IMG/VR virus record: IMGVR_UViG_3300024999_000030
Span: 268,731-332,730 of that record
DNA length: 64,000 nucleotides
Reading direction: 5' to 3' (one strand)
How positions within the stretch are numbered: the first letter of the stretch is position 1; every line of letters starts with the position of its first letter. The notes under the pieces are model-generated. The model ran no database searches and was not told the DNA's origin. It saw nothing but the letters and a program-made list of their open reading frames with translations. The position numbers and the translations under genes are program-made. Below are positions 5,882 to 62,140 of this stretch, piece by piece.

Positions 5882-7309
5882 ATGATAAGTGAAAGCAAAT
5901 TAAAGTTTTGGATTGAAAACAATCAAAACGTTTTGTTCGTTGGTAAGCACGGAGTGGGTAAGACCGCTAGAGTTTTAAATGCCTTTGAGGAATCAAAACT
6001 TAAATGGTTATATTTTAGTGCTTCCACTCTAGATCCATGGGTGGATTTTATTGGCATTCCAAAAGAAGTAAAAGATGCAAATGGCAATAGTTACATAGAC
6101 TTAGTCCGTCCAAAGGCTTTTGCTGAAGACGATGTAGAGGCTATTTTCTTGGACGAATATAACAGAAGTCCTAAAAAAGTTAGAAATGCAGTAATGGAAC
6201 TCATACAATTCAAATCTATTAACGGTAAGAAATTTAAAAACCTTAGAATTATTTGGGCTGCTATTAACCCAGACGAAGAAGGAGATGGAGAAGAAGGTTA
6301 TGATGTGGAAAAACTCGATCCTGCTCAAAGAGATAGGTTTCATGTAATCGTGGATGTTCCATATAAACCAGATCGTGGATATTTTGTGTCTAAATATGGA
6401 AAGGAAATTTCAGAAGATGCTATTGGGTGGTGGACTGATTTAGATAAAGTTTCTCAAAATAGTGTGTCTCCTAGACGATTAGACTATGCATTAGATTTGT
6501 ATGTTAAAAAAGGAGATCTTAGAGACGTCTTACCAAGCAATGTTAACGTAACTAAACTCATACAAGAACTAGGAGGAAGAAGTACAAAGAAGGCTATAGC
6601 TGATTTATATTCCTCTCAAGACGTAGATAAGTCAAAAATCTTTTTATCGTCTAGAAATAATGTGGATGCTATTACTAAACTATTGAATATAAATGAGGGT
6701 TATAGAAAATTCTTTTTGCCTTTAATTGGAGAAGAAGATCTTGCTAGACTTATGTCAACTAGCAATATCATTTATGAAAACGTTATTCAAGATAGTAAGT
6801 ATGAAAGTATTATACAGGAAATTAAGAAAACAAAATCTTCATTAGCTAAAAGACTAATGAAAGATGTGCCACAAAAAATTAAAGGATATACTTTTTCTTC
6901 TGTGTCTTTAGATAATCCACCTAATGCAAAGCGTTCAAAAAAGTTTACTATAAAAACAGGGGTAGCTATAAGTTACGTTTTATCTAGCAAACGTAGTTCA
7001 TTATATGGAACGTACGATAGAGTATGTGCTATTAATTATATAATTCATAATATAAAATCAACAGATGATATTAAAACTTTTAAAGAATCAATTGAAATTA
7101 TGAAAACATTATTCGAGAGATCTAATTTTACTACAATAAATAAAATAACTCACATAGATCATATTTTTGGTTTTGTTATTAAAAAATTAAGTTTACTGAA
7201 TGGTAGAGATGCAGGTAAAGAACTTTCAATCTTTAATGCTAGCCTATCGGCTATTGGCAAAAATAAATTAAACTTATTCTTAGTAAGTAGGGGCATTATG
7301 TATGTTTAA
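5882..7309 (+). CDS. MoxR-like AAA+ ATPase
   Basis: Walker A GKHGVGKT, Walker B IFLDEYNR, AVMELIQ, sensor AAINP, LDPAQRDRF, SPRRL. Confidence 0.88.
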   Translation: MISESKLKFWIENNQNVLFVGKHGVGKTARVLNAFEESKLKWLYFSASTLDPWVDFIGIPKEVKDANGNSYIDLVRPKAFAEDDVEAIFLDEYNRSPKKVRNAVMELIQFKSINGKKFKNLRIIWAAINPDEEGDGEEGYDVEKLDPAQRDRFHVIVDVPYKPDRGYFVSKYGKEISEDAIGWWTDLDKVSQNSVSPRRLDYALDLYVKKGDLRDVLPSNVNVTKLIQELGGRSTKKAIADLYSSQDVDKSKIFLSSRNNVDAITKLLNINEGYRKFFLPLIGEEDLARLMSTSNIIYENVIQDSKYESIIQEIKKTKSSLAKRLMKDVPQKIKGYTFSSVSLDNPPNAKRSKKFTIKTGVAISYVLSSKRSSLYGTYDRVCAINYIIHNIKSTDDIKTFKESIEIMKTLFERSNFTTINKITHIDHIFGFVIKKLSLLNGRDAGKELSIFNASLSAIGKNKLNLFLVSRGIMYV

Positions 7310-42475: not shown

Positions 42476-42510
42476 AGTTTATATCTAAATTGCAATGTTG
42501 GAGGAGTAAA

Positions 42511-43251
42511 ATGAAATATGAGATTGCCACTGATCTTCAGGTAAAGAGCGAAGCTAAAGAGCCTGTTGTCGCAGCAGAACTTTCTATTAACGATAAAATA
42601 AAGAAAGAAGCTTCTGGCCGCCACGTTTATGATGTAGACTCTGCTAGTGGGAAAGAGGCATACGGTAGAAGTCTTGATTCCGCTATTGAATTTCTGTGGG
42701 AAAAGGTAAATCGTAGTGTTGACGTGAGGGCAGATAATAAACTCTCTATTCAACGTGCAGCTAGCTATTATGGTGAAATTGATAAGGCTATTTCTACCAT
42801 CGTTCGTTCTGATGTAGCTGGTATAATGTCTAATGAAGATCTATCTAAGTTTGAAGAAATCCGCATTGCTATTAATAAAAAACATGAGGATGTTCTTAAA
42901 ACCGCATTAGCAGTACACAACAAACCATCTAACGATGAGTGTTTGGAATGTGGTACGTTACTATATGGCGGTAAATGCATTGCCTGTGAGGGTGATGGCG
43001 ATATGGTTAAAGAGGCAGGTTCCCCCGCATTACAATTCTTTGAGAGTGGTTTTATTGTTGGAGTTGCCACCGACATTATGAATTATGTTGTTACTTCAGG
43101 TATGAACTTAACTGATGCGGTTAACACTGCCAAAGAATCATTCGGACTTACAAAACGTGAGGAATATCGTTTGCGTAAATATCTTAACTATATGGGAATG
43201 GTTGCGCCGCAAATGATTTGGCTTCCTCCTTCGGAAACTAGATTTTCTTAA
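42511..43251 (+). CDS. Hypothetical protein with zinc ribbon, putative virion protein
   Basis: GGAGGAG RBS before ATG 42511. CLECG...CIAC; KEA and KTA motifs. Confidence 0.78.
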   Translation: MKYEIATDLQVKSEAKEPVVAAELSINDKIKKEASGRHVYDVDSASGKEAYGRSLDSAIEFLWEKVNRSVDVRADNKLSIQRAASYYGEIDKAISTIVRSDVAGIMSNEDLSKFEEIRIAINKKHEDVLKTALAVHNKPSNDECLECGTLLYGGKCIACEGDGDMVKEAGSPALQFFESGFIVGVATDIMNYVVTSGMNLTDAVNTAKESFGLTKREEYRLRKYLNYMGMVAPQMIWLPPSETRFS

Positions 43252-43269
43252 AAATGGGGGCTCTCACAT

Positions 43270-43830
43270 ATGGCAATAAAAACCTGGAAGGAGTTGCTAT
43301 CTGCCATAGATCCAACTCTGGACGCATCTAATATAGCTTTAACACAAATTTCTGCTAGTTTAGAACTGCCCGACGGAAGAAAGATTGACCTTCCAATCCG
43401 GGCAGATTCTACTGTAGATAGTCTTAAAGCAGCCTTTACTCTTCCTTCTCCCCCAAAAGAAGAGCCTGAACCTGAATCTCAACCACAGATTTTACCAACG
43501 GCTCCTAAAATAACAAGTAAAATGCGTCAGTTCATGAGAGAGTTTTTTGAAACTGAAGCTGATCAAAAAGAATTTATAGAGTTTGCTGCTTTTGATGATA
43601 AGGCTAAGCAGTTTTTTGGCGACGTGTCTAATCCTATAGAGGCCTATGAAACTGAATATCAAGCTATTCCTGGTGTTACAGATTTAGAAAAATTTAAGAA
43701 TTTCTTATATAATAAACCCACGCCCGCATCCCAACCTACCCCTGAGGCAAAAGTTGAGACGCAGCCTATCCCAGCTCCCGCTCTTACTAATAAATCGGTA
43801 GGCAAGGGCCCCAAGAAAAAGAAACAGTAA
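43270..43830 (+). CDS. Hypothetical Pro-rich protein
   Basis: 186-aa ORF with Pro/Glu linkers and a Lys-rich tail. Confidence 0.72.
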   Translation: MAIKTWKELLSAIDPTLDASNIALTQISASLELPDGRKIDLPIRADSTVDSLKAAFTLPSPPKEEPEPESQPQILPTAPKITSKMRQFMREFFETEADQKEFIEFAAFDDKAKQFFGDVSNPIEAYETEYQAIPGVTDLEKFKNFLYNKPTPASQPTPEAKVETQPIPAPALTNKSVGKGPKKKKQ

Positions 43831-43866
43831 GACAGATTAGTCCCCTATTATAAGACGGAGGAACGT

Positions 43867-46800
43867 ATGGCTTTCACCCTGTATTCCGCTAAAGGTAAAG
43901 AAAAGGAAACTAAGACACCTAAAGGCCTAGAGGAAGTTGAAACTTTATTTCCAGGCCAGGGCTCTCTTCAGTCCGCACAAACCGCTCTGCAGGCTACCCC
44001 TAAAAAACCTAAGGCCGAAAAGAAAGAGCTGGTAAAATCCAAGGGTAAACCAAAATTAACAACTAAAGAATCTCCAGAGGCACTTGATTTAGAGGAATCT
44101 GAGCAACCAGAAGATACTTCTAGTTCTTTGGCGGAAACTTTTGAAAAAGCGGAATCGATTACCAGGAAAAAGGGACCATATAGTTTTAATGCTAACTCTC
44201 AATATGAAATTGATACGGACCCGTATTATAGAGTATTTGAACATCGTGGTAAAACTATTATTTCTAGTCAGCCAGACACATATATCGTTATGGATTATAA
44301 AACCGGTTCTTATAATGTGGGATATAAACTTGGGGATGGATCTGTATCTTGGTCTAGATTAACTTCACGCAGTAAAGTTTTAGTTGCTAAAATGGTTAAA
44401 GCTTTGGAAAATGTACCAAGTGATCCAGAAGCAATCAACAATCCCAATGAACCTCAAGGGTCCATGGATTGGGGACAAAGACTCGGAAAATTCTTACACC
44501 TCACTAAACGCGCAGTTGCTTATGGTAATGCTGCTATCTTTAATATTTATATTGCGTCTGGTGAAGGAATTATTCCAGAACCAGATTGGCAAAATAAAAC
44601 TTTTGTAAAATCTGGCGAGTATTATAAGCCGGTTGGGGAAACTTGGGAACCAGAAGAAGCCTTTGTGTGGTATAAGGTTATAGCTTCTGTTTTAGGAACA
44701 CCACAAGAGTGTTTACTTGGAATGGCTAAGCATCGTGGAACCTCTACATTTGACATATATATTGCTGATGTAGACGGTTCAAATTCTCATAAAGCCAGAA
44801 TAGCTGATATAAAATTGTTTAATTATATTTCTGGTGATCAAATTGATATCACGGAAATTAATGATTATTATGAAAAATTTTCCAATAAAGAATCAGCCAA
44901 GCAAGTTGTTTCGGCAGACACAATTGCTACAGATCTTGCCACTGAAGAGGTTAACAAACTTGATTCTTCTACATTCTTCTTTGTTGATGGAAACGCCCCC
45001 AAAAGAATTATAACAGGAACTAGATATGAAATTTTAAGAGAAGGAAGCAAAGCATATATTAAAGCAGCTAGTGGTCCAGCTAAAGCGTTTCATTCTGATC
45101 TTAATTTAAGAACAGCTTTAAATGCTGAATCTATTCCCCTTTCAGAAATAGACCAGGTAGCCAGAATCACCAATAGAAAATCAGGTTTTTACCATGCTGA
45201 TATGAAAGCGAAAATGGAAAATGTAATAGCCCAAGGACACGCTGTTCAGTTTGAAATAGGGTCTATGGGAGACGATGGGACTTTTTATCCAACAGGTAAA
45301 GATGAAGACGTTTTCTGGGCAATCATTCCTACAGGTAGGGATTTTTATATGGAGGTGTCTAAGATTGAAGGTGGTTCTGCTTCTATTACTGCTGACACTA
45401 AAACATTGGAAATGGTGTCTACCTCCCCTGCAAGTCCAGATCAACTTAAAGTAGTGTCTAAACTTATTAGTTCTGTGTATCCGGTTTTCTCTAAAGAAAC
45501 ATATGGGGATGAGGCCCTTAGAGAGCAATTCTCATCGTTATTAATTACACCCCCACCCAATCCATTATATGGTTTTGATTTAACTTCTAAGCATAAACAA
45601 TCTAAAGAATTGCTTTTATTATTTATAAATTATATGTTTAATAATTTAGAAGCTAAATTAACTAAAGACACTGATTATGCAATTACAAGTAAAGAAAATG
45701 TGCTCGCTAAAGTAGATTCTTATTTAGGTAGAGTCACTAAATTAGATGCAGATAGCTTAGCACAATTGTTTTTTGGATCTCCTATAACTCATATTAATGC
45801 TGATTATATTGATAAATTTTATGAAGATATAGTGGGCGCAGGTGCCGATCAAGACTTAGCCTCCACCGAAGAGGGTTTAGGTCAACTTCGCCGCCGTGGT
45901 AAATTTGTAGATTCATATATTCAAAGCCCCATGATAGGGCAGCAAGAAGCGGGTAAATGGTTTATTAAGGCTGTGGAAGCAGTTACTATTGAACCCAGTG
46001 GTATATATGTTATTGAAAAAACTAAACATGGTACGACTAAGAAAAAACAAAATATCTATTTAGCTGAAAGAAATCTTGATTTTGAAAGTGGTACAGACAC
46101 TAGTCGTTTACCTTTTGGTGCTGTGTCTTTCAGTATGATAGATTTTAGAACTGGAAATATAGTCGCCAATGTTATGGCTAAAGAATCCGGTAAATATAAT
46201 TTTCAAGAAATATCTAAAGATGATTTTATTAAAGCATTTTACTCCAGTAGGCCCACTCAAGAGACGCTTGCTCAACGCTTAACTTCCGATCTGAAGGGTA
46301 TCGGATTAACCACGCCTAAAGCAAAAACCGTGTCTAAGCAATTGGTTGGTCAATTAGCAGCCTTATTATCTGACCCAGAAATTATTGCTAATATTCTTGG
46401 TGTTCCAGAAGAAGATGTAGCAACCTGGTTACACGGCCCCGATAAACTAGATGAAAAAATTCTTGCAGAAACCATTGCGTATTTTTCTTCGTTGTTAGGG
46501 GAAGATAAATACATGGGCCCATCCGTGGCCCTAGAATTAGAAAAACTAGTTTCGCAGCTCACGACTAAAGCTAAAAAATTTAATGCTAAAGATTTTATAG
46601 AATCAGCTCCAACAATTGCTGCTGAACTTATGCTTATTGTTTTGAATAAATTACGTGGGACTGACCTTATGTATAAGGTGGCTACTGAGGCCCGCAGGTC
46701 CCTAGACGCTTACTATAATAATACTGGTACTGCCGCATTTGTTAAGGTGTCCACTGGCTTATATAGTGGTCCATGCGCAGTTTTTTCTGATAAAAAAGAT

Positions 46801-49800
46801 GAAAGCAAAATTATTCTTTATCAGGAAGGTAGAATATACAATATAGATAGTGAGGATGCAAAAGAAAGTTTAATTACAAATACCATATCTAGTAAAAATG
46901 TATTTTATGTTGCCTCTATGGGGCAAACGGCAGTAAAAGCTGATGTGACTATGGTTGATAAAGCTGACCGTCTTGCAGCTGAAAATATAGCAATCAAAGA
47001 TATTATGACGTTTGTAACTAGTTATAATGGTGACACTATTTCTCCTGCGGATTTTATAGAATTTTTACAAACCACTATTGTAACTAAACTCAATGTTAAG
47101 CTTAGTTCTAATATGCTTAATAAAGTTGGGCGTATGGCGGCGATGCCTAAGGATGCATTTACACAAGAAAAAGCCCAACAGATTGCAAAAATATTTTCTG
47201 CCGCTGCATTTATTCCTAGAATTTTAGGGCATATTATGATTTATGATATTGCTGCTGGAAAATCTGGACAAATGCTTAAAATTTACAGAGATGTGGTTAC
47301 CACAAATGGATTCTGGGCACCAGTTCCAAGCGATTGGTCTGTGGATCCTAAGGTAGAAAAAAGTGGTATTGTGGTTTATGGAAATTCTAGAGAGTCTTAT
47401 ATTAAAAATCTTATCACGGCCACTCGACCCGCTCCAGCGTTTGGAGATATGGAAACAACTATTGCTTCTATGGATAGAGATTGGGGTACTTCTCCAGAGT
47501 CTCAGGCAAAAGTATATGACTTTTTTAGAAAGGTTAACTATGTTTCTGGCATGTGTTTAGCTAAAGTGGTTTCCTTTGAGGATGGTGAGGAATCAGGTGA
47601 ATCTGAATTTCAAAACATTCAAATTGTAAATCAAAAAATTCAGACTTTCTTTATGGGTCCTAATAAGAAATCATTAGCTTCTAATCTTAGATATGTAATT
47701 GAATCTGGACATAAGAGACTTAGTAAAGATGTAAGACTATATGACCCATCCACTCTCGCCAGAAAGGTGGCATACTGGGCCATGCAGAATTTACATATCT
47801 CAGCTTCGTTTATTGGGCTGTCCTCTAATAGTACAGTAGAATTTAATCGATCTTCTTTTGTGGATTTGATTAATGCATACTTAGCAATGCCAGAAAAATT
47901 CAAAGCGGATAATTTATATACCGATGCTTTGTATGCCGCTATTAAGGTTTCTTTGAGTCGAGCGATGAATATTATTATGACAGATCGCCGTTATCAATTA
48001 GAAAGAGAGACTATCTTAGCTAGAATTCCAGAAGAATATCTTAGTGACGATGCGGTTAGTCGCAGCAAACAAGTTGAATTGGTTCAATATTTAACTCAAG
48101 CGCTTATGTCTTATTGGCTTTCTAATCTCGCAAGCATCTCAGCTCCATCTGGTAAAATGAAAGTAAATCAAAAATTTACTGGTTTTGAAGATTTAGTCCG
48201 TGATCCAGATGAAGTGGTAGCGGGTTTAGCGGCTGCTTCACCAGAATATCTTATCGGTATGTTGTTGTGGACTTTAGCGGATAATAAAGTACAACGTGCT
48301 GTTCGTTCATCCCTGGGTGGCGCCAATACTGGTATTACTTTCCAGGATACTATGCAGCCCGATAAACTCACATTAACCCAGATGCAACAGTTACTTCATG
48401 AAACGTTAGGTTCCTTTACTGTGTCACTTATGTCTATTTTAGATAAGTCTGGACATATTTTAAATAAATATTATAACGTTGCTATTTTAAAAGATTATAA
48501 TAAATCTAGGATTAAGAATAAAGATTTAAGTCTTAGAGCTTTTGCTGAGGCAACCATTAATGATGAATATAGGGCTGCTAAAATTGCCGAAGCCTGGTCT
48601 CCTGCATTTGAAGAAATGAAAACAAGGGCTACGGTTGCAGAATGGAAATCATCTGGTGTGAAGGGCGTTATGAGTCCATCTTTTGCATTGGCTTCTAAAT
48701 TTGGGGCAGGGGCAGTAATAGCTCAAGGTATGAGTGATGAATCTCATGTGAATAATGGTGTACCATTCCTCATTACTGCAATGCAAGCAATGACTAAAGA
48801 TCATAGATTCGCTTTTAAGATGACTGCTGATATTCTAGAACATGAAGATTTTTCAGAAACGCTTCCATTTGCAGCCCAAGAGATTAAACGAATTCTAGAG
48901 GCTGGTAAATTTAAGTATAATTATAAAAATAAATTAGACGCAGATAGTCTTAAAAAATATTTATTGAATGTTTATTTTGAAATCAGACGTCGTAGACAGG
49001 GTGCTTACTATGTTCGGCCAGAAGACTCTATGGCAACGATGGAGGGCCAGACCACTGCATTCGAGGAAGTTGTAAAGGAATTAGCAAATAAAAAAGATGG
49101 TCTTACTAAATATAGTTTTGGCGACATTCAGAAGGAATTTAATTTTGCTTCGCTTCCGCATAAAACTAAAAAAGAATTTACACCTATGGATAAATTCTTT
49201 GAGGTGTTTAAGAAACAGTTAACAGAAAGTGGAATGAATCATATGGGTGCGTTTTCTTCTATCATGCAAACGTTTAATTATAGTAAAAATTACGCCTCGT
49301 TTCCATTATTAGTTTATATGATGAAAAGAAATCTTGGTACTATTCCCAATCTTTCTGATATTCAATATAACAAAGATTTCTTTGAAACAATGGGCCGGGC
49401 TCTTGCAGCCACAGTTATGGATGTTTCTAAACTTAATACAATGACTGATGCTGCAGCTAGGGGAATGCAAAAAAGCTTTGTGTCTGGTGGTTTAAATATT
49501 TCGACTGTCATTTCTAATATTATGGCATTTGTATATTGTTTAAATAATCCAGATATTGGGCAACATCTTAGGGAATTAAATAAACTTGATTCAGCTGGAA
49601 GAGTATCTCTTAACAGGAAAATGATGTCTACTCGATATGGTATTTCATCTCACGCTAAAGAAGTATTAGGCGTTCCTAGTGTGTCTGTTTCACCGGATTT
49701 TGTTGGTATGTTAGATCAAAGTAGGGTAAGTAGTCTAGCGGAAGCAATTAGAGCCTTTAGTAGTAGGCATCAAGATATTGAAGATGTAGTAGACTACATT

Positions 49801-52800
49801 CATGGTGAAGCTACGTATATTCCAGAAGAAGCTAAAAAACTATTTGAAGTCTTCGCTTCTATGGCAGGGCACCAATTAAATTCTACATCTCAGGCAGTAA
49901 GAATTGGAAACGATGAAGCTATTGATAAAGTTACGTCTGGAAATTATGATGCTTCATCTGAGCCCAGTCACAACGCATTTGTTGTGGATGCTATAAATCA
50001 AATTAACGAAAATCTGGTTTATAATGTTTTTGGGGCCACTGAAGCTAAGATGAAGTTTAATCCTAAAAAACCATTTGACACCGGGGCCATTCCAGTAGAT
50101 CAATTTTCTAACTTTACAGATGCTATGAAGGCCGCCATGAAGGCTCATAATATTAACACTTCTGATGATTTAATCGGAATGATTTATAATACCCGTAGAG
50201 ATTTTCAGTCTAGTGGTGAACAGTTGTATGATATTATTTGCAAAATGGTAACGTCAATGTTACCAAAGCAAGCCCCAGATTCAGGGGCTATGCCAGCTTC
50301 TCCCTCTTCAGACGCTGCTTGGAACTTCTATGTAACTCAAGATGGCGTTGACTCACTAGTACCAAAAGCCCTTAAAGATGAAATTATTAATGCGGATGTA
50401 GAAGATATATCTGTAGCTGATGTATTAGCAATGGCAGAAAAGGTTTTTGAAACGCTTTCTATTAAATTAACGGGTAAGGCATTAGATGATTTAGCTACAG
50501 TAAAGCCTAAACTTTCTATTGGACAAAAGGCATTAGATAAAAACTTTTCTACGTTGAAGGCTGATATTTCAAACTTAATTAATAATAAAGAAGAATTAGG
50601 CGATGATGAATACGCCACACAGCTTTATAATATGTATAGTAAAAATAATCGTCTTGTGGTGTTAAAATTTGTGGCCGATAACTACCAAACTATTGGAACA
50701 ACTCCTTTGGAGGCTTGGGACAAAATTGCCGCCATCATGAATAATAAATTATATTTAACGGATAAGTCTTCACAGACTATCGTAGATAAATTTAAGAAAT
50801 CTTTACATAAAACAGGGGGTAATAAAGAATATCCATTTGCGTCCACTGGCTCCTTTGATAATGAAGTTCATGATTTAGCATATCTTGCCACAGAAATAGC
50901 TATTACTTTATCATTACCTCATGGTAAAGTTACTGAAACATTTTCAGTTCCCGTGGACATTCAAAACAATCAAATGGACGTACAACGATATTATCGTACG
51001 GTAATGGCTACAAATGCAGAAAAACATGTGGCCACATTAAGAACAGATATTAAATCATTAACTAGTAAATATCAAGACTTGGTAAATGGAGCACCTGTTA
51101 AAGATACGGTGTTAGCCCTATCTAAAATTATTTTAGATAAGAAACACCGCTTAGATTTAGAGGGAGTGGCGTGCAAGACTCTCATTAGGCCTATGCCGTT
51201 ATCAGAAAGAATTGAAACTAATGTTTTAGAAGATGTTGCTAAAACAGTTTTAGTTTTACCAGCCCGTGCCCTTAAAAGCAGTGATGATAAAACTACCCAT
51301 TATATTGTTATGCAAGATTTAACTTTTAAAAAAATTACCTTAATTCCATATAAAAATCTACCCACAGACATAGCAAAAGAGATGAAAGACTCAGGAAGCG
51401 TCGTAGTGGAATTATATCCTGGAGCTGAAAGCGATATAGCAGTTTTACCAAGTGTCATGGGTTCTGATATTTCTTCAGCCTCTTCAGCTGTGGCTTCACA
51501 TCTCAACGAAGCCTTGGGTGATAAAGTTCCCACAGACAAAGCAGAAGCCCTTCTCGTTTTATTTGGCTATCAACTTAGTTCAATTATAATGGCATTAACC
51601 GATACGCTTACGACTTTTGAATCATATCGCATGGCTATTATTAAAAGAATGGGTTTCAATAGTGGGTCTTATGCGGTTATCAGTCCTTCATTATTGGAAA
51701 TCTCAGAAACAGTTCCAATTATTCAAAAGAATGATTTACCTGTTTCTTTTAAAGAGTTTTTATCTGACATGGACATGGAAGATCAAAATATATATTTAGA
51801 TAAAGAATCTTTGAAAGATTTAGTTAAAACTGTAGTGCCAGTTAAAGTGTTAAAGGTAGATAGGACTTTGAGTGGACGAAAGTGTGCTATTGTTTCTATA
51901 GACATTCCAGGTGAGGTGATTAAATCAAAAAGTGTCCCAACTGTACAAAAACCACCTAGCAGAAGAATTATTGCAAACGTACCATATGAATATTTATCTT
52001 CAGCCGCTGCGGAAAAAACATTACCTGGAGTATATTTTGCTGTTAGGGAAAGGTTAATTTATTCACTCAGTCATCCTATTCCCGGTAAAGAAGCCCTTCT
52101 TAAAAAATTTGAAATCGGGCCAACAGATCCAGCTATGATAAATACTACATGGTTACGTAAACATTTGAATGGTATTCAACAAGCTGAAGAAGCTGGTGCC
52201 ATATTACCTGGAACCACAACCCAAGCTAAACGTCTTTTGGATCGAAAGTTTGCTGAGCCGGCGCGTACAATTGAGCCTTTAATTGGTAAACTTTCAAAAT
52301 CTCCAGTTATTATTGCGCGTGATTTACACTCAACCGTTTTGGATGTGTTAAAGAGAACTTGTAAGGGAGATGAACAAGCATCGATGGATATAGATTCGCA
52401 CTTAGCTCCAATTATGCCTAAAATGTATTCTCTTACACCAGTTAAAACCAGAACATTGGCAAATGCATCTGGACAAAAAAGCATTCGTTTTGATAGTGGA
52501 TCCGAATTGGTTAATGCATATTGGTTGCCTTCTACAAATGCTGACGCTGATTTTCAGAAGAATATCGGTAAATATTATGATACGGCTAGGGCGATATACG
52601 GGGTGAAGAAAACCAAATCTGCTGGCCTTATCAAAGCTATGTCTGAGGCGACGATTATTGCTCCCGCTGAAAAAGCGTTGGCTTTATTAAATGAGTCTTT
52701 ATTGGTTGCAGAAGAAGTAAACGACGATTCAATGATTAAAATTTTATCCGCTGCAATTGAATCCATCCAAGATCATTTTTCTGATGATTTAGTTTCCAAT

Positions 52801-55800
52801 CAATCTTTAGTTCTCTTGACTAGGGCTCCTCTTGGTGATCGCTCTATTATTATACCAGTAAGTAAAAATATGTTTTGTTCATTACAACAGCTGATGGCTT
52901 ATTATACAAACTGGAGTACATTAAAGAGTAAATTAGTTATGACTCCAAAGCTAGCAGAAGTAATGTCCGGCGGCCAAGAACTGCCATGCTCATTTACTTA
53001 TTTGGAATCGTATGCGGATGGTAGTGAAATCAAAGTGCGTATCGCAGATATGGGAGATGGTTTTAAAGTGGTCCCCCATAAATTCATTTTAAAAAGCCCC
53101 ACCACTGGAGCTGATTTAGGTGTAGCAACTGGCGGGTCTAACTCATATTTAGAAGATAGCTCTGCTAGAGCAGATAAAGACTTTGTTAAATCTAAGGACG
53201 ATAAGGCGATTAAGGTATTAAACCCATCTGCCCTTTCTCGTATTAGAAATGTAAATGGGCTTAGATTAGTTGTCTATAATGGTCAGTCTTTTACTAAGAA
53301 ATTCGAAGCACCTATTTTACCAAATGCAATTAGTGGTATTAAAATTAAATTTGAACCTCAGCGTGCAATTGTAATGTCTGGAGATAGATACGAAATAGTA
53401 TCTGATGCTTCTGTGTCTCTCAATCCAGACTTTTCATTGCGGGCAACCAGAGAGCGCGGTAAACTGAAAGGCGGTGGTTACGACCTTAAGGTTAGCGATA
53501 GTCGAAGTACATTTGTTAGAACTATTTCTGGTGACGAGCAGCTTAAACGTATTAGAAGTATGATGGATAGGGATGCCACTATTTATGAAATACTGGGTGC
53601 TGAATTTGGCAACTTGGGCGATATTATTAAAGAACAAATGAATCAAATTGCCATTACACAGAAAGCACATCGCACTGCCGAACTAAGGCAAGAACAGGGT
53701 GGAGATGCAGATCTCTGCGCAGATTTAAGGGCCCTTGGTAGTAAGTTCCAAACCAAAGGTCGTGGATCAGATGAGCGCGTTATTGAGATTCCAGACAATA
53801 CAATTTTTGATGATTTAAATAAACTTAAATGCATTGGTATTGGTACTAAAATACAACCCCTAATCCACCCCACGATAGAGGGGGTGGAAGATACTCCCGC
53901 AGTGAATGCTTCTATAGCATTAAATACGATTGATGTGGTAAAGCGTGCTAAATTCAAGAGGGCTGGATTTGCTTCGGGTGGGGGTGTAAATCTTTTAAAC
54001 GATTTAATTGGTAAGAGAAAACCAGGCGCTACATCATCCCCATTACAGGCTTCTTTACAACATGTATACAATACCGTTCTTAATGATGGATGGAATGAAT
54101 TTATTAATAAATATGAAATGTCTGCAAGTAAACAATTTGCTAAGAAAAATCCATATATAAATTTAATCGATAACTATAAGAAACTATTAGAAGCTAAACA
54201 AAATGGAGTTTCTCTTGGGACTGAAGCCGATAGGCAATTTAAAGCTTTGAGTGCTGTAATTGGCGCTGGTAAATCTTATTTAAATATGTCTATGTCTAAG
54301 GTAGAAGAACTAATTAAAGACGATACCCATAAAGCTGTTTTGTCTAGGTTCCACGATATTACAGACATAGAAAAAATGATTACGAATAGCCATAAAGATG
54401 GACGAGGACAACACGCTTCACGTGTTTCAAAACAATTATTTCTTTTGGGATCCATTCTAGCTTATTATATTTATTTAGCTAAACATGAACCAACAGTAGA
54501 GTCAGCCGATGCTCTTAAATGGTACGAGCGTTTTCTTAAAACTGAAGCCCAAGGAATAGTATTTAATTTTATTAAGCAATTTGGGTTGTTGGATGCGGGG
54601 GCTAGATTGGGTATCACGGGCGTTAGGGGCAAATCTAAGAATTTATTTATTGCTAAATCACCAGATCTTGCAAACGTTACTCGGCAGCTAGAGGAAAATA
54701 TTAAAATCATAACCGATAGTATTGCTGCTAACGATGGCACAACTGGCTATGTAATGGGATTATCTAATTTCTTTGGTTTGATGCCTTTAAGTAATCGTGT
54801 TTTAATTAATGTATTGTTTAAAGATATTTCTCCCTTTGGTGTGAAACGGGATGAAAAAAATCCACAGGTGAAAGAGGTATCTGAAGCATTAAATAATTTA
54901 TTTCAAGAAATAATGCTGGGAGATAGTTCTGTATTACAATTGGACGCTAGCACTAATATGGCTATTGGTGAATTACCAGCCACATTTCTTCCAGAAAATT
55001 TCCGTAAATTATTAGCCATTGAAGAGGAATATATTCCAGAAGAAGAACTAGAAATGGATGAGGGTGAAGATTTAACACCTGAACAAATTGAAGCTTTGGG
55101 GCGCAATGCCGATATGTTAATTATACAATTTAAGAAAGCTATGCCTATCCGATTTGCTAAATTAATATCTAAGCCTCGAAAACTTAAGGTGACCACTATG
55201 AAATGTAAAACTTTTGGAGATACAGACTTAGTTACAGAACCATCAAGTCCCATGAATATTCCAGAAGATAATAAACGTAGACAAGAACAAGCCTCGTCTA
55301 AACTGCTGTTGTTTAAATATGCAGATGAAAATGTTATTGATGCTCAAATAGAAGAATTACGCATTGTGTTAGCTGAAAACAATAAAAACATGCAAGAAAT
55401 GAAAGAACAATGGACTAGGGTTCTTGTTAATTCTATAGACTTAAAAGACATAGATGAAAAAGAAAGAATCAAATTTGCAGAAGACACATTTAAAGATTTT
55501 ACTAAATTTATTTATAAGCGTGATAATCTTTATAAGAATGTGGATCAATTACCAGCTATGCTAGAAAAATTGTATGAAATTATATCTGGCGGTCATAAAT
55601 ATGATAAAATACCAACAGCTTTTATGCAAATGTTTTTTAGCTATAGGTCTCCAGCGTATAGTTTAATGCGTAGTATGGTGTCGTTATTTAATGACAATAG
55701 TTTTCTAGCTGAACAAAATGCTTTAATTGAAGATGTTATTTCATCTAATAGTTTAGATACATTTGAAGATGGAAATAAATCGATGGAAGGAGAGGATGCG

Positions 55801-55833
55801 CCAGAAGGCACTTTAATGAATCCACACACCTAA
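43867..55833 (+). CDS. Giant hypothetical protein (3988 aa), candidate internal/ejected virion protein
   Basis: Uninterrupted 11.97-kb ORF with GGAGG RBS and a near-match late motif CTATTATAA at 43845. No catalytic motif recognised. Confidence 0.9.
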   Translation: MAFTLYSAKGKEKETKTPKGLEEVETLFPGQGSLQSAQTALQATPKKPKAEKKELVKSKGKPKLTTKESPEALDLEESEQPEDTSSSLAETFEKAESITRKKGPYSFNANSQYEIDTDPYYRVFEHRGKTIISSQPDTYIVMDYKTGSYNVGYKLGDGSVSWSRLTSRSKVLVAKMVKALENVPSDPEAINNPNEPQGSMDWGQRLGKFLHLTKRAVAYGNAAIFNIYIASGEGIIPEPDWQNKTFVKSGEYYKPVGETWEPEEAFVWYKVIASVLGTPQECLLGMAKHRGTSTFDIYIADVDGSNSHKARIADIKLFNYISGDQIDITEINDYYEKFSNKESAKQVVSADTIATDLATEEVNKLDSSTFFFVDGNAPKRIITGTRYEILREGSKAYIKAASGPAKAFHSDLNLRTALNAESIPLSEIDQVARITNRKSGFYHADMKAKMENVIAQGHAVQFEIGSMGDDGTFYPTGKDEDVFWAIIPTGRDFYMEVSKIEGGSASITADTKTLEMVSTSPASPDQLKVVSKLISSVYPVFSKETYGDEALREQFSSLLITPPPNPLYGFDLTSKHKQSKELLLLFINYMFNNLEAKLTKDTDYAITSKENVLAKVDSYLGRVTKLDADSLAQLFFGSPITHINADYIDKFYEDIVGAGADQDLASTEEGLGQLRRRGKFVDSYIQSPMIGQQEAGKWFIKAVEAVTIEPSGIYVIEKTKHGTTKKKQNIYLAERNLDFESGTDTSRLPFGAVSFSMIDFRTGNIVANVMAKESGKYNFQEISKDDFIKAFYSSRPTQETLAQRLTSDLKGIGLTTPKAKTVSKQLVGQLAALLSDPEIIANILGVPEEDVATWLHGPDKLDEKILAETIAYFSSLLGEDKYMGPSVALELEKLVSQLTTKAKKFNAKDFIESAPTIAAELMLIVLNKLRGTDLMYKVATEARRSLDAYYNNTGTAAFVKVSTGLYSGPCAVFSDKKDESKIILYQEGRIYNIDSEDAKESLITNTISSKNVFYVASMGQTAVKADVTMVDKADRLAAENIAIKDIMTFVTSYNGDTISPADFIEFLQTTIVTKLNVKLSSNMLNKVGRMAAMPKDAFTQEKAQQIAKIFSAAAFIPRILGHIMIYDIAAGKSGQMLKIYRDVVTTNGFWAPVPSDWSVDPKVEKSGIVVYGNSRESYIKNLITATRPAPAFGDMETTIASMDRDWGTSPESQAKVYDFFRKVNYVSGMCLAKVVSFEDGEESGESEFQNIQIVNQKIQTFFMGPNKKSLASNLRYVIESGHKRLSKDVRLYDPSTLARKVAYWAMQNLHISASFIGLSSNSTVEFNRSSFVDLINAYLAMPEKFKADNLYTDALYAAIKVSLSRAMNIIMTDRRYQLERETILARIPEEYLSDDAVSRSKQVELVQYLTQALMSYWLSNLASISAPSGKMKVNQKFTGFEDLVRDPDEVVAGLAAASPEYLIGMLLWTLADNKVQRAVRSSLGGANTGITFQDTMQPDKLTLTQMQQLLHETLGSFTVSLMSILDKSGHILNKYYNVAILKDYNKSRIKNKDLSLRAFAEATINDEYRAAKIAEAWSPAFEEMKTRATVAEWKSSGVKGVMSPSFALASKFGAGAVIAQGMSDESHVNNGVPFLITAMQAMTKDHRFAFKMTADILEHEDFSETLPFAAQEIKRILEAGKFKYNYKNKLDADSLKKYLLNVYFEIRRRRQGAYYVRPEDSMATMEGQTTAFEEVVKELANKKDGLTKYSFGDIQKEFNFASLPHKTKKEFTPMDKFFEVFKKQLTESGMNHMGAFSSIMQTFNYSKNYASFPLLVYMMKRNLGTIPNLSDIQYNKDFFETMGRALAATVMDVSKLNTMTDAAARGMQKSFVSGGLNISTVISNIMAFVYCLNNPDIGQHLRELNKLDSAGRVSLNRKMMSTRYGISSHAKEVLGVPSVSVSPDFVGMLDQSRVSSLAEAIRAFSSRHQDIEDVVDYIHGEATYIPEEAKKLFEVFASMAGHQLNSTSQAVRIGNDEAIDKVTSGNYDASSEPSHNAFVVDAINQINENLVYNVFGATEAKMKFNPKKPFDTGAIPVDQFSNFTDAMKAAMKAHNINTSDDLIGMIYNTRRDFQSSGEQLYDIICKMVTSMLPKQAPDSGAMPASPSSDAAWNFYVTQDGVDSLVPKALKDEIINADVEDISVADVLAMAEKVFETLSIKLTGKALDDLATVKPKLSIGQKALDKNFSTLKADISNLINNKEELGDDEYATQLYNMYSKNNRLVVLKFVADNYQTIGTTPLEAWDKIAAIMNNKLYLTDKSSQTIVDKFKKSLHKTGGNKEYPFASTGSFDNEVHDLAYLATEIAITLSLPHGKVTETFSVPVDIQNNQMDVQRYYRTVMATNAEKHVATLRTDIKSLTSKYQDLVNGAPVKDTVLALSKIILDKKHRLDLEGVACKTLIRPMPLSERIETNVLEDVAKTVLVLPARALKSSDDKTTHYIVMQDLTFKKITLIPYKNLPTDIAKEMKDSGSVVVELYPGAESDIAVLPSVMGSDISSASSAVASHLNEALGDKVPTDKAEALLVLFGYQLSSIIMALTDTLTTFESYRMAIIKRMGFNSGSYAVISPSLLEISETVPIIQKNDLPVSFKEFLSDMDMEDQNIYLDKESLKDLVKTVVPVKVLKVDRTLSGRKCAIVSIDIPGEVIKSKSVPTVQKPPSRRIIANVPYEYLSSAAAEKTLPGVYFAVRERLIYSLSHPIPGKEALLKKFEIGPTDPAMINTTWLRKHLNGIQQAEEAGAILPGTTTQAKRLLDRKFAEPARTIEPLIGKLSKSPVIIARDLHSTVLDVLKRTCKGDEQASMDIDSHLAPIMPKMYSLTPVKTRTLANASGQKSIRFDSGSELVNAYWLPSTNADADFQKNIGKYYDTARAIYGVKKTKSAGLIKAMSEATIIAPAEKALALLNESLLVAEEVNDDSMIKILSAAIESIQDHFSDDLVSNQSLVLLTRAPLGDRSIIIPVSKNMFCSLQQLMAYYTNWSTLKSKLVMTPKLAEVMSGGQELPCSFTYLESYADGSEIKVRIADMGDGFKVVPHKFILKSPTTGADLGVATGGSNSYLEDSSARADKDFVKSKDDKAIKVLNPSALSRIRNVNGLRLVVYNGQSFTKKFEAPILPNAISGIKIKFEPQRAIVMSGDRYEIVSDASVSLNPDFSLRATRERGKLKGGGYDLKVSDSRSTFVRTISGDEQLKRIRSMMDRDATIYEILGAEFGNLGDIIKEQMNQIAITQKAHRTAELRQEQGGDADLCADLRALGSKFQTKGRGSDERVIEIPDNTIFDDLNKLKCIGIGTKIQPLIHPTIEGVEDTPAVNASIALNTIDVVKRAKFKRAGFASGGGVNLLNDLIGKRKPGATSSPLQASLQHVYNTVLNDGWNEFINKYEMSASKQFAKKNPYINLIDNYKKLLEAKQNGVSLGTEADRQFKALSAVIGAGKSYLNMSMSKVEELIKDDTHKAVLSRFHDITDIEKMITNSHKDGRGQHASRVSKQLFLLGSILAYYIYLAKHEPTVESADALKWYERFLKTEAQGIVFNFIKQFGLLDAGARLGITGVRGKSKNLFIAKSPDLANVTRQLEENIKIITDSIAANDGTTGYVMGLSNFFGLMPLSNRVLINVLFKDISPFGVKRDEKNPQVKEVSEALNNLFQEIMLGDSSVLQLDASTNMAIGELPATFLPENFRKLLAIEEEYIPEEELEMDEGEDLTPEQIEALGRNADMLIIQFKKAMPIRFAKLISKPRKLKVTTMKCKTFGDTDLVTEPSSPMNIPEDNKRRQEQASSKLLLFKYADENVIDAQIEELRIVLAENNKNMQEMKEQWTRVLVNSIDLKDIDEKERIKFAEDTFKDFTKFIYKRDNLYKNVDQLPAMLEKLYEIISGGHKYDKIPTAFMQMFFSYRSPAYSLMRSMVSLFNDNSFLAEQNALIEDVISSNSLDTFEDGNKSMEGEDAPEGTLMNPHT

Positions 55834-55834
55834 A

Positions 55835-57817
55835 ATGAAATGTAGTGTTTGTAAATTACAATTTGAGCCATTAACTAGCCATGAAATAAGTATGTGTCCT
55901 GATTGTAAAATTTTTTTAGCCCGTTCTCCAAAAGACCATCAAATAGATGTTCCTGAAGAGGCAAAGGAAATTGCAGTTCCAGTAGCAAAAACATTTGCTA
56001 GAGATTTGGCTTCTGCTTTTGAAGATGTAGACGTAACTAGATGGTGTGAAAAATACGTTAGCTTACCCGATAGTGATGCTCCCTTTGGCGTTAATGATTG
56101 TGGAAGGGATTATTTAAAAGAACCTTTTTATTATATTACTGGCGAGGCTTTATCTAAGGAAGGTAAACCAACTGTTATTCTTAAGGGTCGTCAAGTAGGT
56201 TTTTCTGTTTCTTCTTCTGCTTTATATTTGTATCTTTTAAATTGTGGTTTATATACAGATCTAAGAGTCCTTCATGCTTTTCCATCTTTATTAAACTCAG
56301 CTTCTTTTAATGATGAAAAGGTGGAAGTAATTCTTTCTAAATCGGAACACATTAGACGCAGAACATATACATCAGAAACCATGTGGTTCGATGAAGATTC
56401 TAAACAGTTAAATAGTAAACCCAAATACATTGGTAAGTGGACACAACGTGTTAAGCAATTTCAGGGTAATAATTTTTTAGTAATAGATGCTACCTCTAAG
56501 GACTCTGGCCGTCTTCGTGGTCAAACTTTCCATATTATATTTTATGATGAAGTTCAGGATATGGCTAGGAAAGCTATAGAAAATCTAGAAGAAACATTAA
56601 CGACATCACCATATGGTCCACCAGGTTTAGGCGTTAAGGTGTATTTTGGTACCCCATTTAATGAAGGTACACATTTTCATGCTTTATGGCTTAAAACAGA
56701 TCAAAGGTATTATCATTTAAAATGCCATACTTGTAATGAAACATATCCATTTTATCAATATGGCTCTGATTCTTGGCGTGAAATATGGGTCGAAAAACAC
56801 ACAGTTAAATGTCCTAAGTGTGGAGCATTGGAAGATAAACGTAAAGCTGTTACGGGTGGACTTTGGGTTCCGCAAAACCCGACATCCCCAATGCGAGGAT
56901 ATCATTTTAATCAATTATATGTTCCGACACTTTCAAAGGAAAGTGTTCTTTCTAAAGAAATTGATAAAGCTCCCCAACAGTTTCAAAATGAAGTCCTTGG
57001 GGAATTTTATGTTGGCGCTATGTCAGGGGAATCTTATAGAGAACTAGTATTAAGTTGTGCTGATAATCAAGTATCATATCCTCAATATATTGAGCCTTAT
57101 ACTTCTACCACAGTAACATTGGGAGTAGATTGGGGAGGAAAGATAGATGAAAGGTCCCCACAAGGTAGTTATACGTACATATTAATACTTTCGCATAAAG
57201 ATGGGAAGATGCAAGTAGAAAGATTAGAAAGGGTGGACTCTCGTGACCCAAGCGAGCAAGTCCAAAGAGTGAAAGATTTGTTTATAAAGTACTCTGTTAT
57301 TCAGGGTGTAGGAGACATGGGTTATGGTTTGGCTCAAATCTATGAACTCCAAAAGGAATTCAATCGCAGGGTATTAGGCTGCCACTCCGTGTCAGCTAAA
57401 AATGTTTATAACTACAATGAATCATCTATTCCTCCCTTCGTTAGTGTAAATAAAGATATGGTTATAGATGAGGTTTTATCTCAATTTAGAAATTCTAGAT
57501 TTGTGTTGCCATATAAAACCACCGAAGATCAATTTTTAACAGAAGCCCTAGCAGAAGAAACAGCAGGTCTGTTGCCAGCTGAAAAGCTAGTTAATGGAAA
57601 TAGAATTAAAACATATGGAAAACGTGGATCAAAAACAATAGATGGTTTTATGGCACTTATGTATGCTTATATAGCCATGAGATATACACTATCTGGCGGT
57701 TTTTCTTCTGATGTGCAAACCACTTACGGCGCGGGTAGAGCGATGCCCCTTCCAAGAAAAGTTAGTAATTTACCATCTAGTTTAATGTCAAGAATGAAAT
57801 CGAGCGGTAGAAGATAA
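55835..57817 (+). CDS. terL: Terminase large subunit
   Basis: Walker A KGRQVGFS, Walker B IFYDEVQD, GTP, zinc ribbon CHTC/CPKC, nuclease LGVDWGG...GDMG...IDGFMA. Confidence 0.92.
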   Translation: MKCSVCKLQFEPLTSHEISMCPDCKIFLARSPKDHQIDVPEEAKEIAVPVAKTFARDLASAFEDVDVTRWCEKYVSLPDSDAPFGVNDCGRDYLKEPFYYITGEALSKEGKPTVILKGRQVGFSVSSSALYLYLLNCGLYTDLRVLHAFPSLLNSASFNDEKVEVILSKSEHIRRRTYTSETMWFDEDSKQLNSKPKYIGKWTQRVKQFQGNNFLVIDATSKDSGRLRGQTFHIIFYDEVQDMARKAIENLEETLTTSPYGPPGLGVKVYFGTPFNEGTHFHALWLKTDQRYYHLKCHTCNETYPFYQYGSDSWREIWVEKHTVKCPKCGALEDKRKAVTGGLWVPQNPTSPMRGYHFNQLYVPTLSKESVLSKEIDKAPQQFQNEVLGEFYVGAMSGESYRELVLSCADNQVSYPQYIEPYTSTTVTLGVDWGGKIDERSPQGSYTYILILSHKDGKMQVERLERVDSRDPSEQVQRVKDLFIKYSVIQGVGDMGYGLAQIYELQKEFNRRVLGCHSVSAKNVYNYNESSIPPFVSVNKDMVIDEVLSQFRNSRFVLPYKTTEDQFLTEALAEETAGLLPAEKLVNGNRIKTYGKRGSKTIDGFMALMYAYIAMRYTLSGGFSSDVQTTYGAGRAMPLPRKVSNLPSSLMSRMKSSGRR

Positions 57818-62137: not shown

Positions 62138-62140
62138 GTC

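What the first reader, a model, noticed from the sequence alone, without database searches (positions are those of the whole stretch)
43867..55833. 3988-aa orphan protein directly coupled to the terminase gene
Seen: a 12-kb single ORF with no internal repeats or catalytic motif that I could recognise. It has a charged, flexible N-terminus and an acidic C-terminal region with LFKYA|DE. terL begins 2 nt after its stop with no obvious RBS, which suggests translational coupling. Established: very large head-packaged proteins in other phages include N4 virion RNA polymerase, crAss-like ejection/RNAP proteins and P1 DarB. Inference: an internal or ejected protein of unknown function. It is not repeat-like as tape measures usually are, and it lies in the head rather than the tail module.
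Basis: partly seen in the sequence, partly recalled or inferred. Interest (0 to 1): 0.7.

Follow-up and report, generated by a model that had tools for sequence, protein, structure and literature searches.

The report
Giant orphan protein with terminase-coupled end module
A real 3988-residue gene of an uncultivated groundwater jumbo phage joins a fast-evolving giant body of unknown function to a small conserved end module; sister phages encode that module as a separate gene, and it is always read straight into the DNA-packaging motor gene.

Summary
ORF 43867..55833 (+, 3988 aa) is real, has no repeats, and matches no Pfam, PHROG, PDB or cultured-phage sequence. terL starts 1 nt after its stop without a ribosome-binding site. 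The ORF assembles identically in several independent contigs, so it is not chimeric.

New findings:
- The family is tiny. An exhaustive profile search of 1.84 billion proteins gave 7 hits. All members sit just upstream of terL in one clade of jumbo myovirus-like phages.
- The protein has two parts. The body (aa 1 to ~3777) is 23% identical to a relative whose TerL and portal are 57-59% identical.
- The C-terminal module (aa ~3778-3988) is a confident 7-helix bundle plus an acidic tail. It has no fold relative.
- In two sister phages this module is a separate gene with its own SD, lying between the giant gene and terL.
- The stop/start junction with terL is kept in all six relatives. Their TerLs share a clade-specific N-terminal Cys4 extension.

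Best reading (confidence about 0.4): the module is an adaptor at the small-terminase position that links a giant late protein, probably virion-associated cargo, to the packaging machinery. TerL is made by termination-reinitiation. The body's function remains unassigned. Tape measure, RNA polymerase and polyvalent effector are not supported.

The parts
43857..43861 (+). Shine-Dalgarno GGAGG of the giant gene
   Evidence: Sequence read. The same GACGGAGGA-n-ATGGC context occurs in relative L037.
43867..55833 (+). Giant ORF, 3988 aa plus stop
   Evidence: Identical in independent contigs. Full-length collinear homologs: P0002 (3881 aa, 65% identity) and P0003 (4349 aa, ~23% identity).
43867..44166 (+). 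Charged, low-complexity N-terminal ~100 aa
   Evidence: 18% acidic, 17% basic, hydropathy -1.0, lowest entropy of the protein. Not clearly conserved in the distant homolog.
43867..55197 (+). Giant body (aa 1-3777): fast-evolving, non-repetitive, no known domain
   Evidence: No Pfam, PHROG or PDB hit for it or for its homologs. No hit in INPHARED phages. ESM Atlas uninformative. 23% identity to G003 versus 57-59% for TerL and portal. The AF2 model of aa 2790-3777 has low confidence.
53107..53268 (+). Best-conserved blocks of the body (GVAT-x-GSN and R-x-RNVNGL, aa 3081-3134)
   Evidence: The only 15-residue windows with 8 or more residues identical in all three full-length homologs. Function unknown.
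55186..55200 (+). Possible internal start: AAGGTGA, 5 nt, then in-frame ATG (Met3778) at the body/module boundary
   Evidence: It is one of only 3 in-frame starts in the whole ORF with an SD match of 5 or more bases. Equivalent SD+ATG sites occur in g37 (Met3667) and g38 (Met4087). The g38 site aligns with the start of the standalone genes. Suggestive only.
55198..55320 (+). Linker of the C-terminal module (aa 3778-3818), includes LFKYADE
   Evidence: pLDDT under 50. Poorly conserved.
55321..55746 (+). Core of the C-terminal module (aa 3819-3960): 7-helix bundle
   Evidence: AF2 pLDDT is 76-92 over most of the core, falling to 65-69 in the outermost blocks. 18 invariant columns in 8 sequences. 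Standalone in L039 and L060. No fold relative.
55747..55830 (+). Disordered acidic tail ending in the conserved A/S-P-x-G-S/T-L motif
55831..55837 (+). Stop/start junction TAA-A-ATG between the giant gene and terL
   Evidence: Relatives have TAATG overlap (L039, L060, L061), TAA-GA-ATG (L037) and TAG + 9 nt + GTG (L038).
55835..57817 (+). Large terminase (660 aa)
   Evidence: phrog_675 E 5.7e-60. The homolog in L060 carries PF05876 GpA_ATPase.
55841..55906 (+). Clade-specific Cys4 motif (C-x2-C-x14-C-x2-C) in the N-terminal extension of TerL
   Evidence: Present in all six TerLs of the giant-bearing clade. The first ~50 residues are absent from the TerLs of the ~35%-identical relatives.
42490..43830 (+). 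Two upstream genes (253 aa, conserved; 186 aa, fast-evolving) that bound the giant's slot
   Evidence: The 253-aa protein has homologs (~358 aa) just upstream of a ~200-aa Cys-rich ORF and terL in distant relatives. The 186-aa protein has no homolog there.

Best explanation
The gene encodes a two-part late protein.

Shown:
- The body (aa 1 to ~3777) is a lineage-specific, rapidly diverging, non-repetitive polypeptide with no detectable enzyme domain.
- The last ~210 aa are an autonomous module: a linker, a ~140-aa helical bundle and an acidic tail with a conserved terminal motif.
- This module exists as a separate gene in two sister phages.
- It always ends at, or overlaps, the terL start codon.
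- It occurs only in the clade whose TerL carries an extra N-terminal Cys4 segment.

Inferred:
- The module is a protein-protein adaptor working with the packaging machinery. It occupies the small-terminase slot and may be this clade's TerS equivalent.
- It tethers the giant body to that machinery, covalently in fused phages and non-covalently in split ones.
- The body is most likely a virion-associated (head-internal, possibly ejected) cargo or structural protein.
- TerL is translated by termination-reinitiation of ribosomes finishing the module.
- A free copy of the module may also be made from the internal SD+ATG at Met3778.
For: Modularity:
- An exhaustive profile search found only 7 proteins. 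They include 236-aa and 298-aa standalone versions.
- In L039 and L060 the standalone gene lies between a large ORF and terL. That large ORF is cut by the contig start and is homologous to the end of the giant body (profile E 1e-58 and 2e-39).
- The standalone gene has its own conserved CGGAGG-n9-ATG.
- L039 and L060 are different phages (45% identity in the upstream ORF) from different assemblies, so the split is not a sequencing error.
- The TerL tree puts them as sisters inside the giant-bearing clade (92/95; clade 100/100). One fission event is therefore enough.

Structure: AF2 gives a confident helical core with disordered flanks.

Coupling: the stop/start spacing to terL is -1 to +9 nt in six relatives, and the window has no SD.

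Co-occurrence: the TerL Cys4 N-terminal extension is found only in this clade.

Slot: in ~35%-TerL relatives the conserved upstream genes keep their order, but a ~200-aa Cys-rich ORF takes the place of the 186-aa gene plus the giant gene.

No other TerS: three Pfam TerS families are absent from the whole genome, and no neighbouring gene has a PHROG terminase-small hit.

Late/head context: terL, portal, protease and MCP follow on the same strand.

Fast evolution: the body is 23% and the module 26% identical, against 57-59% for TerL, portal and the 253-aa neighbour.

Internal start candidate at the module boundary.

Precedent for a C-terminal region needed for encapsidation of a giant virion protein: N4 vRNAP (PMC5512222, read).
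Against: - No HTH or basic DNA-binding segment is conserved in the module. It is acidic.
- The TerL + module complex prediction gave no answer (score 0.00). That is neither support nor refutation.
- As far as I know, a TerS fused to a 3800-aa body has no precedent.
- Nothing here shows that the protein is in the virion.
- The body's fold could not be modelled (mean pLDDT 42).
- The module is not demonstrably homologous to the ~200-aa ORFs that hold the same slot in distant relatives (hhalign probability ~1%).
Confidence: 0.4

Rival explanations
1. Head-internal or ejected giant protein whose C-terminal module is a capsid-targeting, scaffold-like domain rather than a terminase partner. This follows the logic of lambda C/Nu3 or the N4 vRNAP C-terminus. 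Free module made from the internal start (or from the separate gene) co-assembles with portal, scaffold or coat and drags the giant into the procapsid before DNA packaging. Adjacency to terL would then only reflect late-operon order.
For: - All characterised phage proteins of this size that I know of are virion proteins (own knowledge: N4 vRNAP, P23-45 tape measure, P1 DarB).
- The N4 vRNAP C-terminal region is required for encapsidation (PMC5512222).
- The module is acidic and helical, like many scaffolding proteins.
- There is an in-frame SD+ATG at the module boundary.
- The gene lies in the head module and a head maturation protease is encoded nearby.
Against: - Scaffold-type genes normally lie between portal/protease and the MCP, not upstream of terL (own knowledge).
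- The strict stop/start junction with terL is conserved in every relative.
- The co-occurring TerL N-terminal extension is left unexplained.
- No scaffold family or fold hit.
Confidence: 0.28
2. Non-virion intracellular protein, for example an organiser of the replication or packaging site, or a host-takeover or anti-defence factor. It would be expressed with the late genes, and its end module would recruit or regulate terminase. Because TerL can only be made after ribosomes finish 12 kb, the ORF could also act as a translational delay or limiter for TerL.
For: - If the module is a TerS-like partner, the complex sits outside the capsid during packaging and leaves afterwards, so a fused body need not enter the virion (inference).
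- Fast evolution fits conflict-related proteins.
- Coupling without an SD makes TerL output depend on completion of the giant ORF in fused phages.
Against: - I know of no precedent for a non-virion phage protein of ~440 kDa.
- No enzymatic or known defence/anti-defence domain.
- In split phages the module has its own SD, so a delay mechanism cannot be general.
Confidence: 0.17
3. Tape measure or another tail protein misplaced next to the head genes.
For: Size and a probably helix-rich composition (low-confidence model).
Against: - No TMP family hit and no repeats.
- The tail module, with fibre, baseplate wedge and lysin-bearing tail proteins, lies 17-105 kb into the record.
- 3988 aa would imply a tail of roughly 600 nm (own knowledge: about 0.15 nm per residue).
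- The gene is flanked by genes conserved with terL and portal, not by tube or chaperone genes.
Confidence: 0.03
4. Artefact: chimeric assembly, or a non-coding or decayed region that happens to be open.
For: None found.
Against: - Identical sequence in separate assemblies with no gaps or joints.
- Full-length collinear homologs of 3881 and 4349 aa in other phages.
- A 12-kb open frame in AT-rich DNA.
Confidence: 0.01

Closest known systems
Small terminase subunits (TerS; e.g. lambda gpNu1, T4 gp16, P22 gp3)
   Same: The module occupies the gene slot directly upstream of terL and is translationally coupled to it. Its standalone size is ~236-298 aa. It is helical with a flexible C-terminal tail carrying a conserved short motif. 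No other TerS is recognisable in the genome.
   Different: No sequence or fold similarity to any TerS. No HTH or basic DNA-binding part. In four of six lineages it is the C-terminus of a 3.9-4.3-kaa protein.
N4-like virion RNA polymerase (gp50, ~3500 aa)
   Same: A giant single polypeptide of a tailed phage with a helical N-terminal part and a C-terminal region needed for incorporation into the capsid (PMC5512222).
   Different: No T7-like polymerase motifs and no Pfam or PDB hit. Different gene position. The end module can be a separate gene.
Nested protease/scaffold genes (lambda C/Nu3 type)
   Same: A possible in-frame internal start would yield a free copy of the C-terminal domain that a larger protein also carries.
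   Different: The position is upstream of terL instead of between portal and MCP. There is no protease or scaffold homology. The internal start is only predicted.
Polyvalent packaged effectors (P1 DarB and relatives; Iyer et al. 2017, PMC5512222)
   Same: Very large phage protein in a portal-terminase phage, fast-evolving.
   Different: Polyvalent proteins are defined by strings of recognisable enzymatic domains. None is detectable here.
~200-aa Cys-rich ORF family upstream of terL in the ~35%-TerL relatives (alignment A6)
   Same: Same slot between the homolog of the 253-aa gene and terL. Helical with an acidic tail.
   Different: No detectable homology (hhalign probability ~1%). It has a central Cys cluster, which the module lacks (except the N-terminal extension of P0006).

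Membership tests
Small terminase (TerS) | Gene directly upstream of terL, same strand, start/stop coupled | tested here: met
   spacing of -1 to +9 nt in six relatives.
Small terminase (TerS) | Match to a TerS sequence family or a TerS fold | tested here: not met
   No Pfam or PHROG hit. PDB profile search empty. Foldseek PDB and BFVD, VIA-wide, AFDB and Atlas give no TerS above noise.
Small terminase (TerS) | DNA-binding domain (HTH or basic N-terminus) | tested here: not met
   No HTH family hit and no conserved basic segment. The module is acidic.
Small terminase (TerS) | Binds TerL | tested here: inconclusive
   Complex prediction score 0.00, verdict 'no answer'. The co-occurrence with the clade-specific TerL N-terminal extension is only correlative.
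Small terminase (TerS) | Ring oligomer of 8-12 subunits | not tested
It needs multimer prediction or SEC-MALS/cryo-EM.
Tape measure protein | Located in the tail module between chaperone/tube and baseplate genes | tested here: not met
   The tail genes are at 17-105 kb of the record. The ORF abuts terL.
Tape measure protein | TMP family match or internal repeats | tested here: not met
Virion RNA polymerase (N4 gp50 / crAss-like / P23-45 TMP-RNAP) | T7-like motifs A-C or double-psi beta-barrel NADFDGD-type motif, or a family match | tested here: not met
   Motif scan. Pfam, PHROG and PDB searches. Fold-level test of the body failed for lack of a confident model.
Polyvalent packaged effectors (DarB-like) | Two or more recognisable enzymatic/effector domains in one polypeptide | tested here: not met
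   No domain in the query or in its homologs.
Head-internal / ejected proteins in general | Presence in purified virions and release on infection | not testable with these tools
   The phage is uncultivated. No proteome is available.
Nested C-terminal scaffold (lambda C/Nu3 type) | In-frame internal initiation giving a free C-terminal domain | tested here: inconclusive
   SD+ATG sits at the boundary in three fused lineages. There are no expression data.

The most novel reading that the evidence does not exclude
The end module is a new kind of packaging adaptor. It replaces a classical small terminase and physically hands a 0.44-MDa protein to the terminase/portal vertex. The DNA-packaging machinery would then load, or be primed by, a giant protein cargo. 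The clade-specific Cys4 N-terminus of TerL would be its docking site.
Probability: 0.1. Interest if true: 0.85.

Novelty: new variant of a known kind. Interest (0 to 1): 0.55.

Why it matters
Small terminases and packaged giant proteins are both poorly understood in jumbo phages. Many jumbo phages have no recognisable TerS.

Here a conserved, confidently folded module without fold relatives sits in the TerS slot. It is alternately fused to, or separated from, a 3.8-kaa body. That natural fusion/fission pair says the two act together.

If the module binds TerL or portal, it would define a new adaptor family. It would also suggest a route by which very large proteins are brought to the packaging vertex.

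The module is small enough (~210 aa) to express and test directly, even though the phage is uncultivated.

Tried and rejected
- Pfam and PHROG scans of the giant and of its homologs P0002, P0003 and the L060 fragment: nothing.
- phmmer against PDB: nothing.
- tblastn against 50,697 phage records: nothing.
- ESM Atlas feature search on both halves: scores 0.55 and 0.69, uninformative. Two earlier calls failed on length.
- Word-indexed homolog searches with the query, with P0003 and with the module profile added nothing real. P0009 is a 941-bp chimeric contig that joins a ferredoxin reductase to a module tail, and I discarded it.
- Metagenome scan with the module profile returned only contigs already known, plus a 5-kb fragment of the close relative.
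- AF2 of aa 2790-3988 gave mean pLDDT 42. The fold search of that model is meaningless.
- Because of that result I used the second structure job on the module rather than on aa 1100-2299 (alignment A4). No fold test exists for aa 1-2789.
- hhalign of the module, and of the upstream 186-aa protein, against the ~200-aa Cys-rich family: probability 1-2%, so homology is not shown.
- Windowed profiles of the three full-length homologs against all ORFs of related loci and of the own genome found no further relative of the body.
- L061/P0008 was first taken as a third split case. Its frame is open to the contig edge, so it is undetermined.
- The N-terminus is not clearly conserved in the distant homolog, so no N-terminal signal is claimed.

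Full report
**1. The observation**

The window is the last 64 kb of a 332,730-bp IMG/VR virus record, which CheckV rates 100% complete. The ORF 43867..55833 (+) is exactly as described. It has 3988 codons and an ATG start, with GGAGG 6 nt upstream. The next gene, 55835..57817, is a large terminase (phrog_675, E 5.7e-60), followed by the portal gene.

The junction reads TAA-A-ATG. The 18 nt before the terL start hold no SD-like motif, although 27 of 45 genes of the window have one. There are no internal protein repeats, no paralog in the genome and no meaningful tandem DNA repeat. The N-terminus is charged and of low complexity, and the last ~290 aa are acidic.

The ORF is not an assembly artefact:
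- It is 100% identical in another IMG/VR contig.
- It stands on 15 contigs in the protein collection.
- It lies without mismatch, gap or joint inside Logan contigs of 140, 149 and 307 kb from three groundwater metagenome runs.
- In the 307-kb contig it lies mid-contig, so the record's ends are arbitrary.

**2. What kind of phage and module**

TerL is only ~22% identical to SPO1-like and other cultured phages. Downstream of the portal come two small genes. Next is an ORF with a head-maturation-protease match that runs over the record's end. Across the junction lies the major head protein, at record 6205-7221 (phrog_2522, E 5.7e-78).

Tail fibre, baseplate wedge and lysin-bearing tail proteins lie at 17-105 kb of the record. 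The giant gene therefore sits at the 5' edge of the head/packaging module of a myovirus-like jumbo phage. It is far from the tail genes.

**3. The family**

Nothing is found in Pfam, PHROGs, PDB sequences, INPHARED phages or the ESM Atlas.

A profile of the last ~1200 aa was scored against all 1.84 billion representative proteins and gave seven hits:
- two full-length homologs, P0002 (3881 aa) and P0003 (4349 aa);
- a 1829-aa fragment;
- four short proteins (151-298 aa) that match only the last ~150-230 profile positions.

P0003 is collinear with the query over its whole length, at about 23% identity.

TerL-based searches of IMG/VR recovered the neighbourhoods. In relatives with TerL 83% and 56% identical, a giant ORF again ends at terL.

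In relatives with TerL ~35% identical there is no giant gene. The upstream genes (homologs of window genes 35216, 36359, 36691, 37433, 39958 and 42490) keep their order. A ~200-aa Cys-rich ORF lies between the homolog of the 253-aa gene and terL.

The giant body has no relative in those loci or elsewhere in its own genome. The giant gene is thus an innovation of one clade. That clade has 100/100 support on the TerL tree.

**4. Two parts**

The strongest conservation between the query and P0003 is in the last ~150 aa.

In two further phages, L039 (an IMG/VR contig) and L060 (a Logan assembly of another run), this part is a separate gene of 236 and 298 aa. It lies between terL and a large ORF that is cut by the contig start. 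That large ORF is homologous to the end of the giant body (profile E 1e-58 and 2e-39).

The separate gene has its own conserved CGGAGG-n9-ATG and overlaps the end of the upstream ORF by 13-22 nt. The two phages differ strongly (45% identity in the upstream ORF), so the split is real. They are sisters on the TerL tree (92/95), so a single fission of an ancestrally fused gene is the simplest history. L061 is undetermined because its frame is open to the contig edge.

AlphaFold2 with eight sequences models the module as follows:
- a disordered linker;
- a core of seven helices, query aa ~3819-3960, with pLDDT 76-92 over most of it;
- a disordered acidic tail ending in a conserved A/S-P-x-G-S/T-L motif.

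**5. Link to the terminase**

In all six relatives the module's stop codon abuts or overlaps the terL start:
- TAATG in L039, L060 and L061;
- TAA-A-ATG in the window;
- TAA-GA-ATG in L037;
- TAG, 9 nt, then GTG in L038.

This is the signature of termination-reinitiation. It is also the usual arrangement of terS and terL (established knowledge for lambda Nu1-A, T4 16-17 and P22 3-2).

The TerLs of this clade, and only these, carry about 50 extra N-terminal residues with a C-x2-C-x13-15-C-x2-C motif. Three Pfam TerS families are absent from the whole genome. A structure prediction of TerL with the module gave no answer and is not used either way.

In the fused genes an in-frame start with an SD-like motif sits at the body/module boundary:
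- Met3778 in the window is preceded by AAGGTGA. It is one of only three in-frame starts with an SD match of 5 or more bases in the whole ORF.
- Equivalent sites occur in L037 and L038. The L038 site aligns with the start of the standalone genes.

This suggests, but does not show, that a free module is also made.

**6. Rates**

Identity between the window and the G003 phage:

| Protein | Identity |
|---|---|
| TerL | 57% |
| Portal | 59% |
| 253-aa neighbour | 58% |
| Giant body | 23% |
| C-terminal module | 26% |
| 835-aa neighbour | 30% |

The giant evolves much faster than the core morphogenetic genes.

**7. Interpretation**

Shown: a real, clade-restricted, two-part gene. Its end module is autonomous, confidently folded, without known relatives, and invariably coupled to terL.

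Inferred: the module is an adaptor to the packaging machinery. The fusion/fission pattern (Rosetta-stone logic) says that the body and the module work together.

By position, size, helical nature and flexible tail, the module is the best candidate for this clade's small-terminase equivalent. However, it fails the sequence, fold and DNA-binding tests for membership, so I do not file it as a TerS.

The body is most likely virion-associated cargo or structure. This rests on precedent, since the characterised phage proteins of this size that I know of are virion proteins. N4 vRNAP needs its C-terminal region for encapsidation (PMC5512222). It also rests on the gene's place in the late head operon. 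It has not been tested.

Rivals are listed separately:
- a scaffold-like targeting domain unrelated to terminase function;
- a non-virion organiser or regulator, including a translational limiter of TerL;
- a tape measure;
- an artefact.

**8. Novelty and score**

No member of the family is named or characterised. The module has no fold relative. As far as I know, a TerS-slot module fused to a ~3800-aa body has not been described.

The general kinds (giant late phage proteins; a small partner gene coupled to terL) are known, so I rate it a new variant of a known kind. I give about a 10% chance that it is something categorically new, namely protein cargo handed to the packaging motor. Interest is 0.55. 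The fusion/fission module is a concrete, testable handle, but the function of 95% of the protein remains unknown.

Noticed in passing
window 58984-59997 (portal gene 57832-60648): The portal carries a 338-aa insertion (aa 385-722) with intein features. It starts with Cys, ends in ...IQGN, and is followed by Ser. It has a weak Intein_splicing match, and a PHROG 'thymidylate synthase' hit that is probably an intein in that family. Relatives L006, L039, L021 and L007 have an insertion at the same site. L016 has one at a different site. Many relatives have intein-less ~570-aa portals.
   Followed up: partly
window 55841-55906 (TerL aa 3-24): TerL has a clade-specific N-terminal extension with a Cys4 zinc-ribbon-like motif (C-x2-C-x14-C-x2-C). 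It is absent from the TerLs of the ~35%-identical relatives. In those relatives the ~200-aa ORF upstream of terL carries a Cys cluster instead.
   Followed up: partly
window 62138-64000 and record start (G000:C1:1-1116): An ORF with a head-maturation-protease match is open to the last base of the record (621 aa). A frame is open for 371 aa from the first base of the record. This is probably one gene of ~990 aa or more across an arbitrary break of a circularly permuted genome. A 307-kb Logan contig holds the window region mid-contig.
   Followed up: partly
G000:C1:7283-8281 (outside the window): A GIY-YIG/HNH-type homing endonuclease gene lies directly after the major head protein gene (record 6205-7221).
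   Followed up: no
L007-L032, ORF directly upstream of terL (e.g. L016:9358-9957): A conserved ~200-aa family has an N-terminal helical part, a central C-x2-C...C-x-C...C-x2-C cluster and an acidic tail ending D-x-A-D-Y-x2-H-A. It holds the TerS slot in the ~35%-TerL relatives. It has no Pfam or PHROG match.
   Followed up: partly
window 39958-42465 (835 aa): This gene has an 895-aa homolog in G003. In the distant relatives only ~150-214-aa homologs occur at the same position. It is a second gene of this neighbourhood that is greatly expanded in the giant-bearing clade.
   Followed up: no
window 43270-43830 (186 aa) and L037:905-1624: The small gene just upstream of the giant has a Pro-rich linker and a Lys-rich tail. 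In L037 the tail is expanded by tandem SQSPTEPTAPSKR-PTLTNKKVPGKG units. It evolves as fast as the giant and has no homolog in the distant relatives.
   Followed up: no
G000:C1:17663-25243, 66288-72161, 85011-91307: The genome has three further very large ORFs: 2526 aa with a tail-fibre match, 1957 aa with a tail-lysin match, and a 2098-aa orphan.
   Followed up: partly
P0009 (941-bp ENA contig): A 236-aa protein joins a ferredoxin-reductase-like N-terminus (Fer2, FAD_binding_6) to the last ~55 aa of a module like P0008. It is most likely a chimeric short contig.
   Followed up: no
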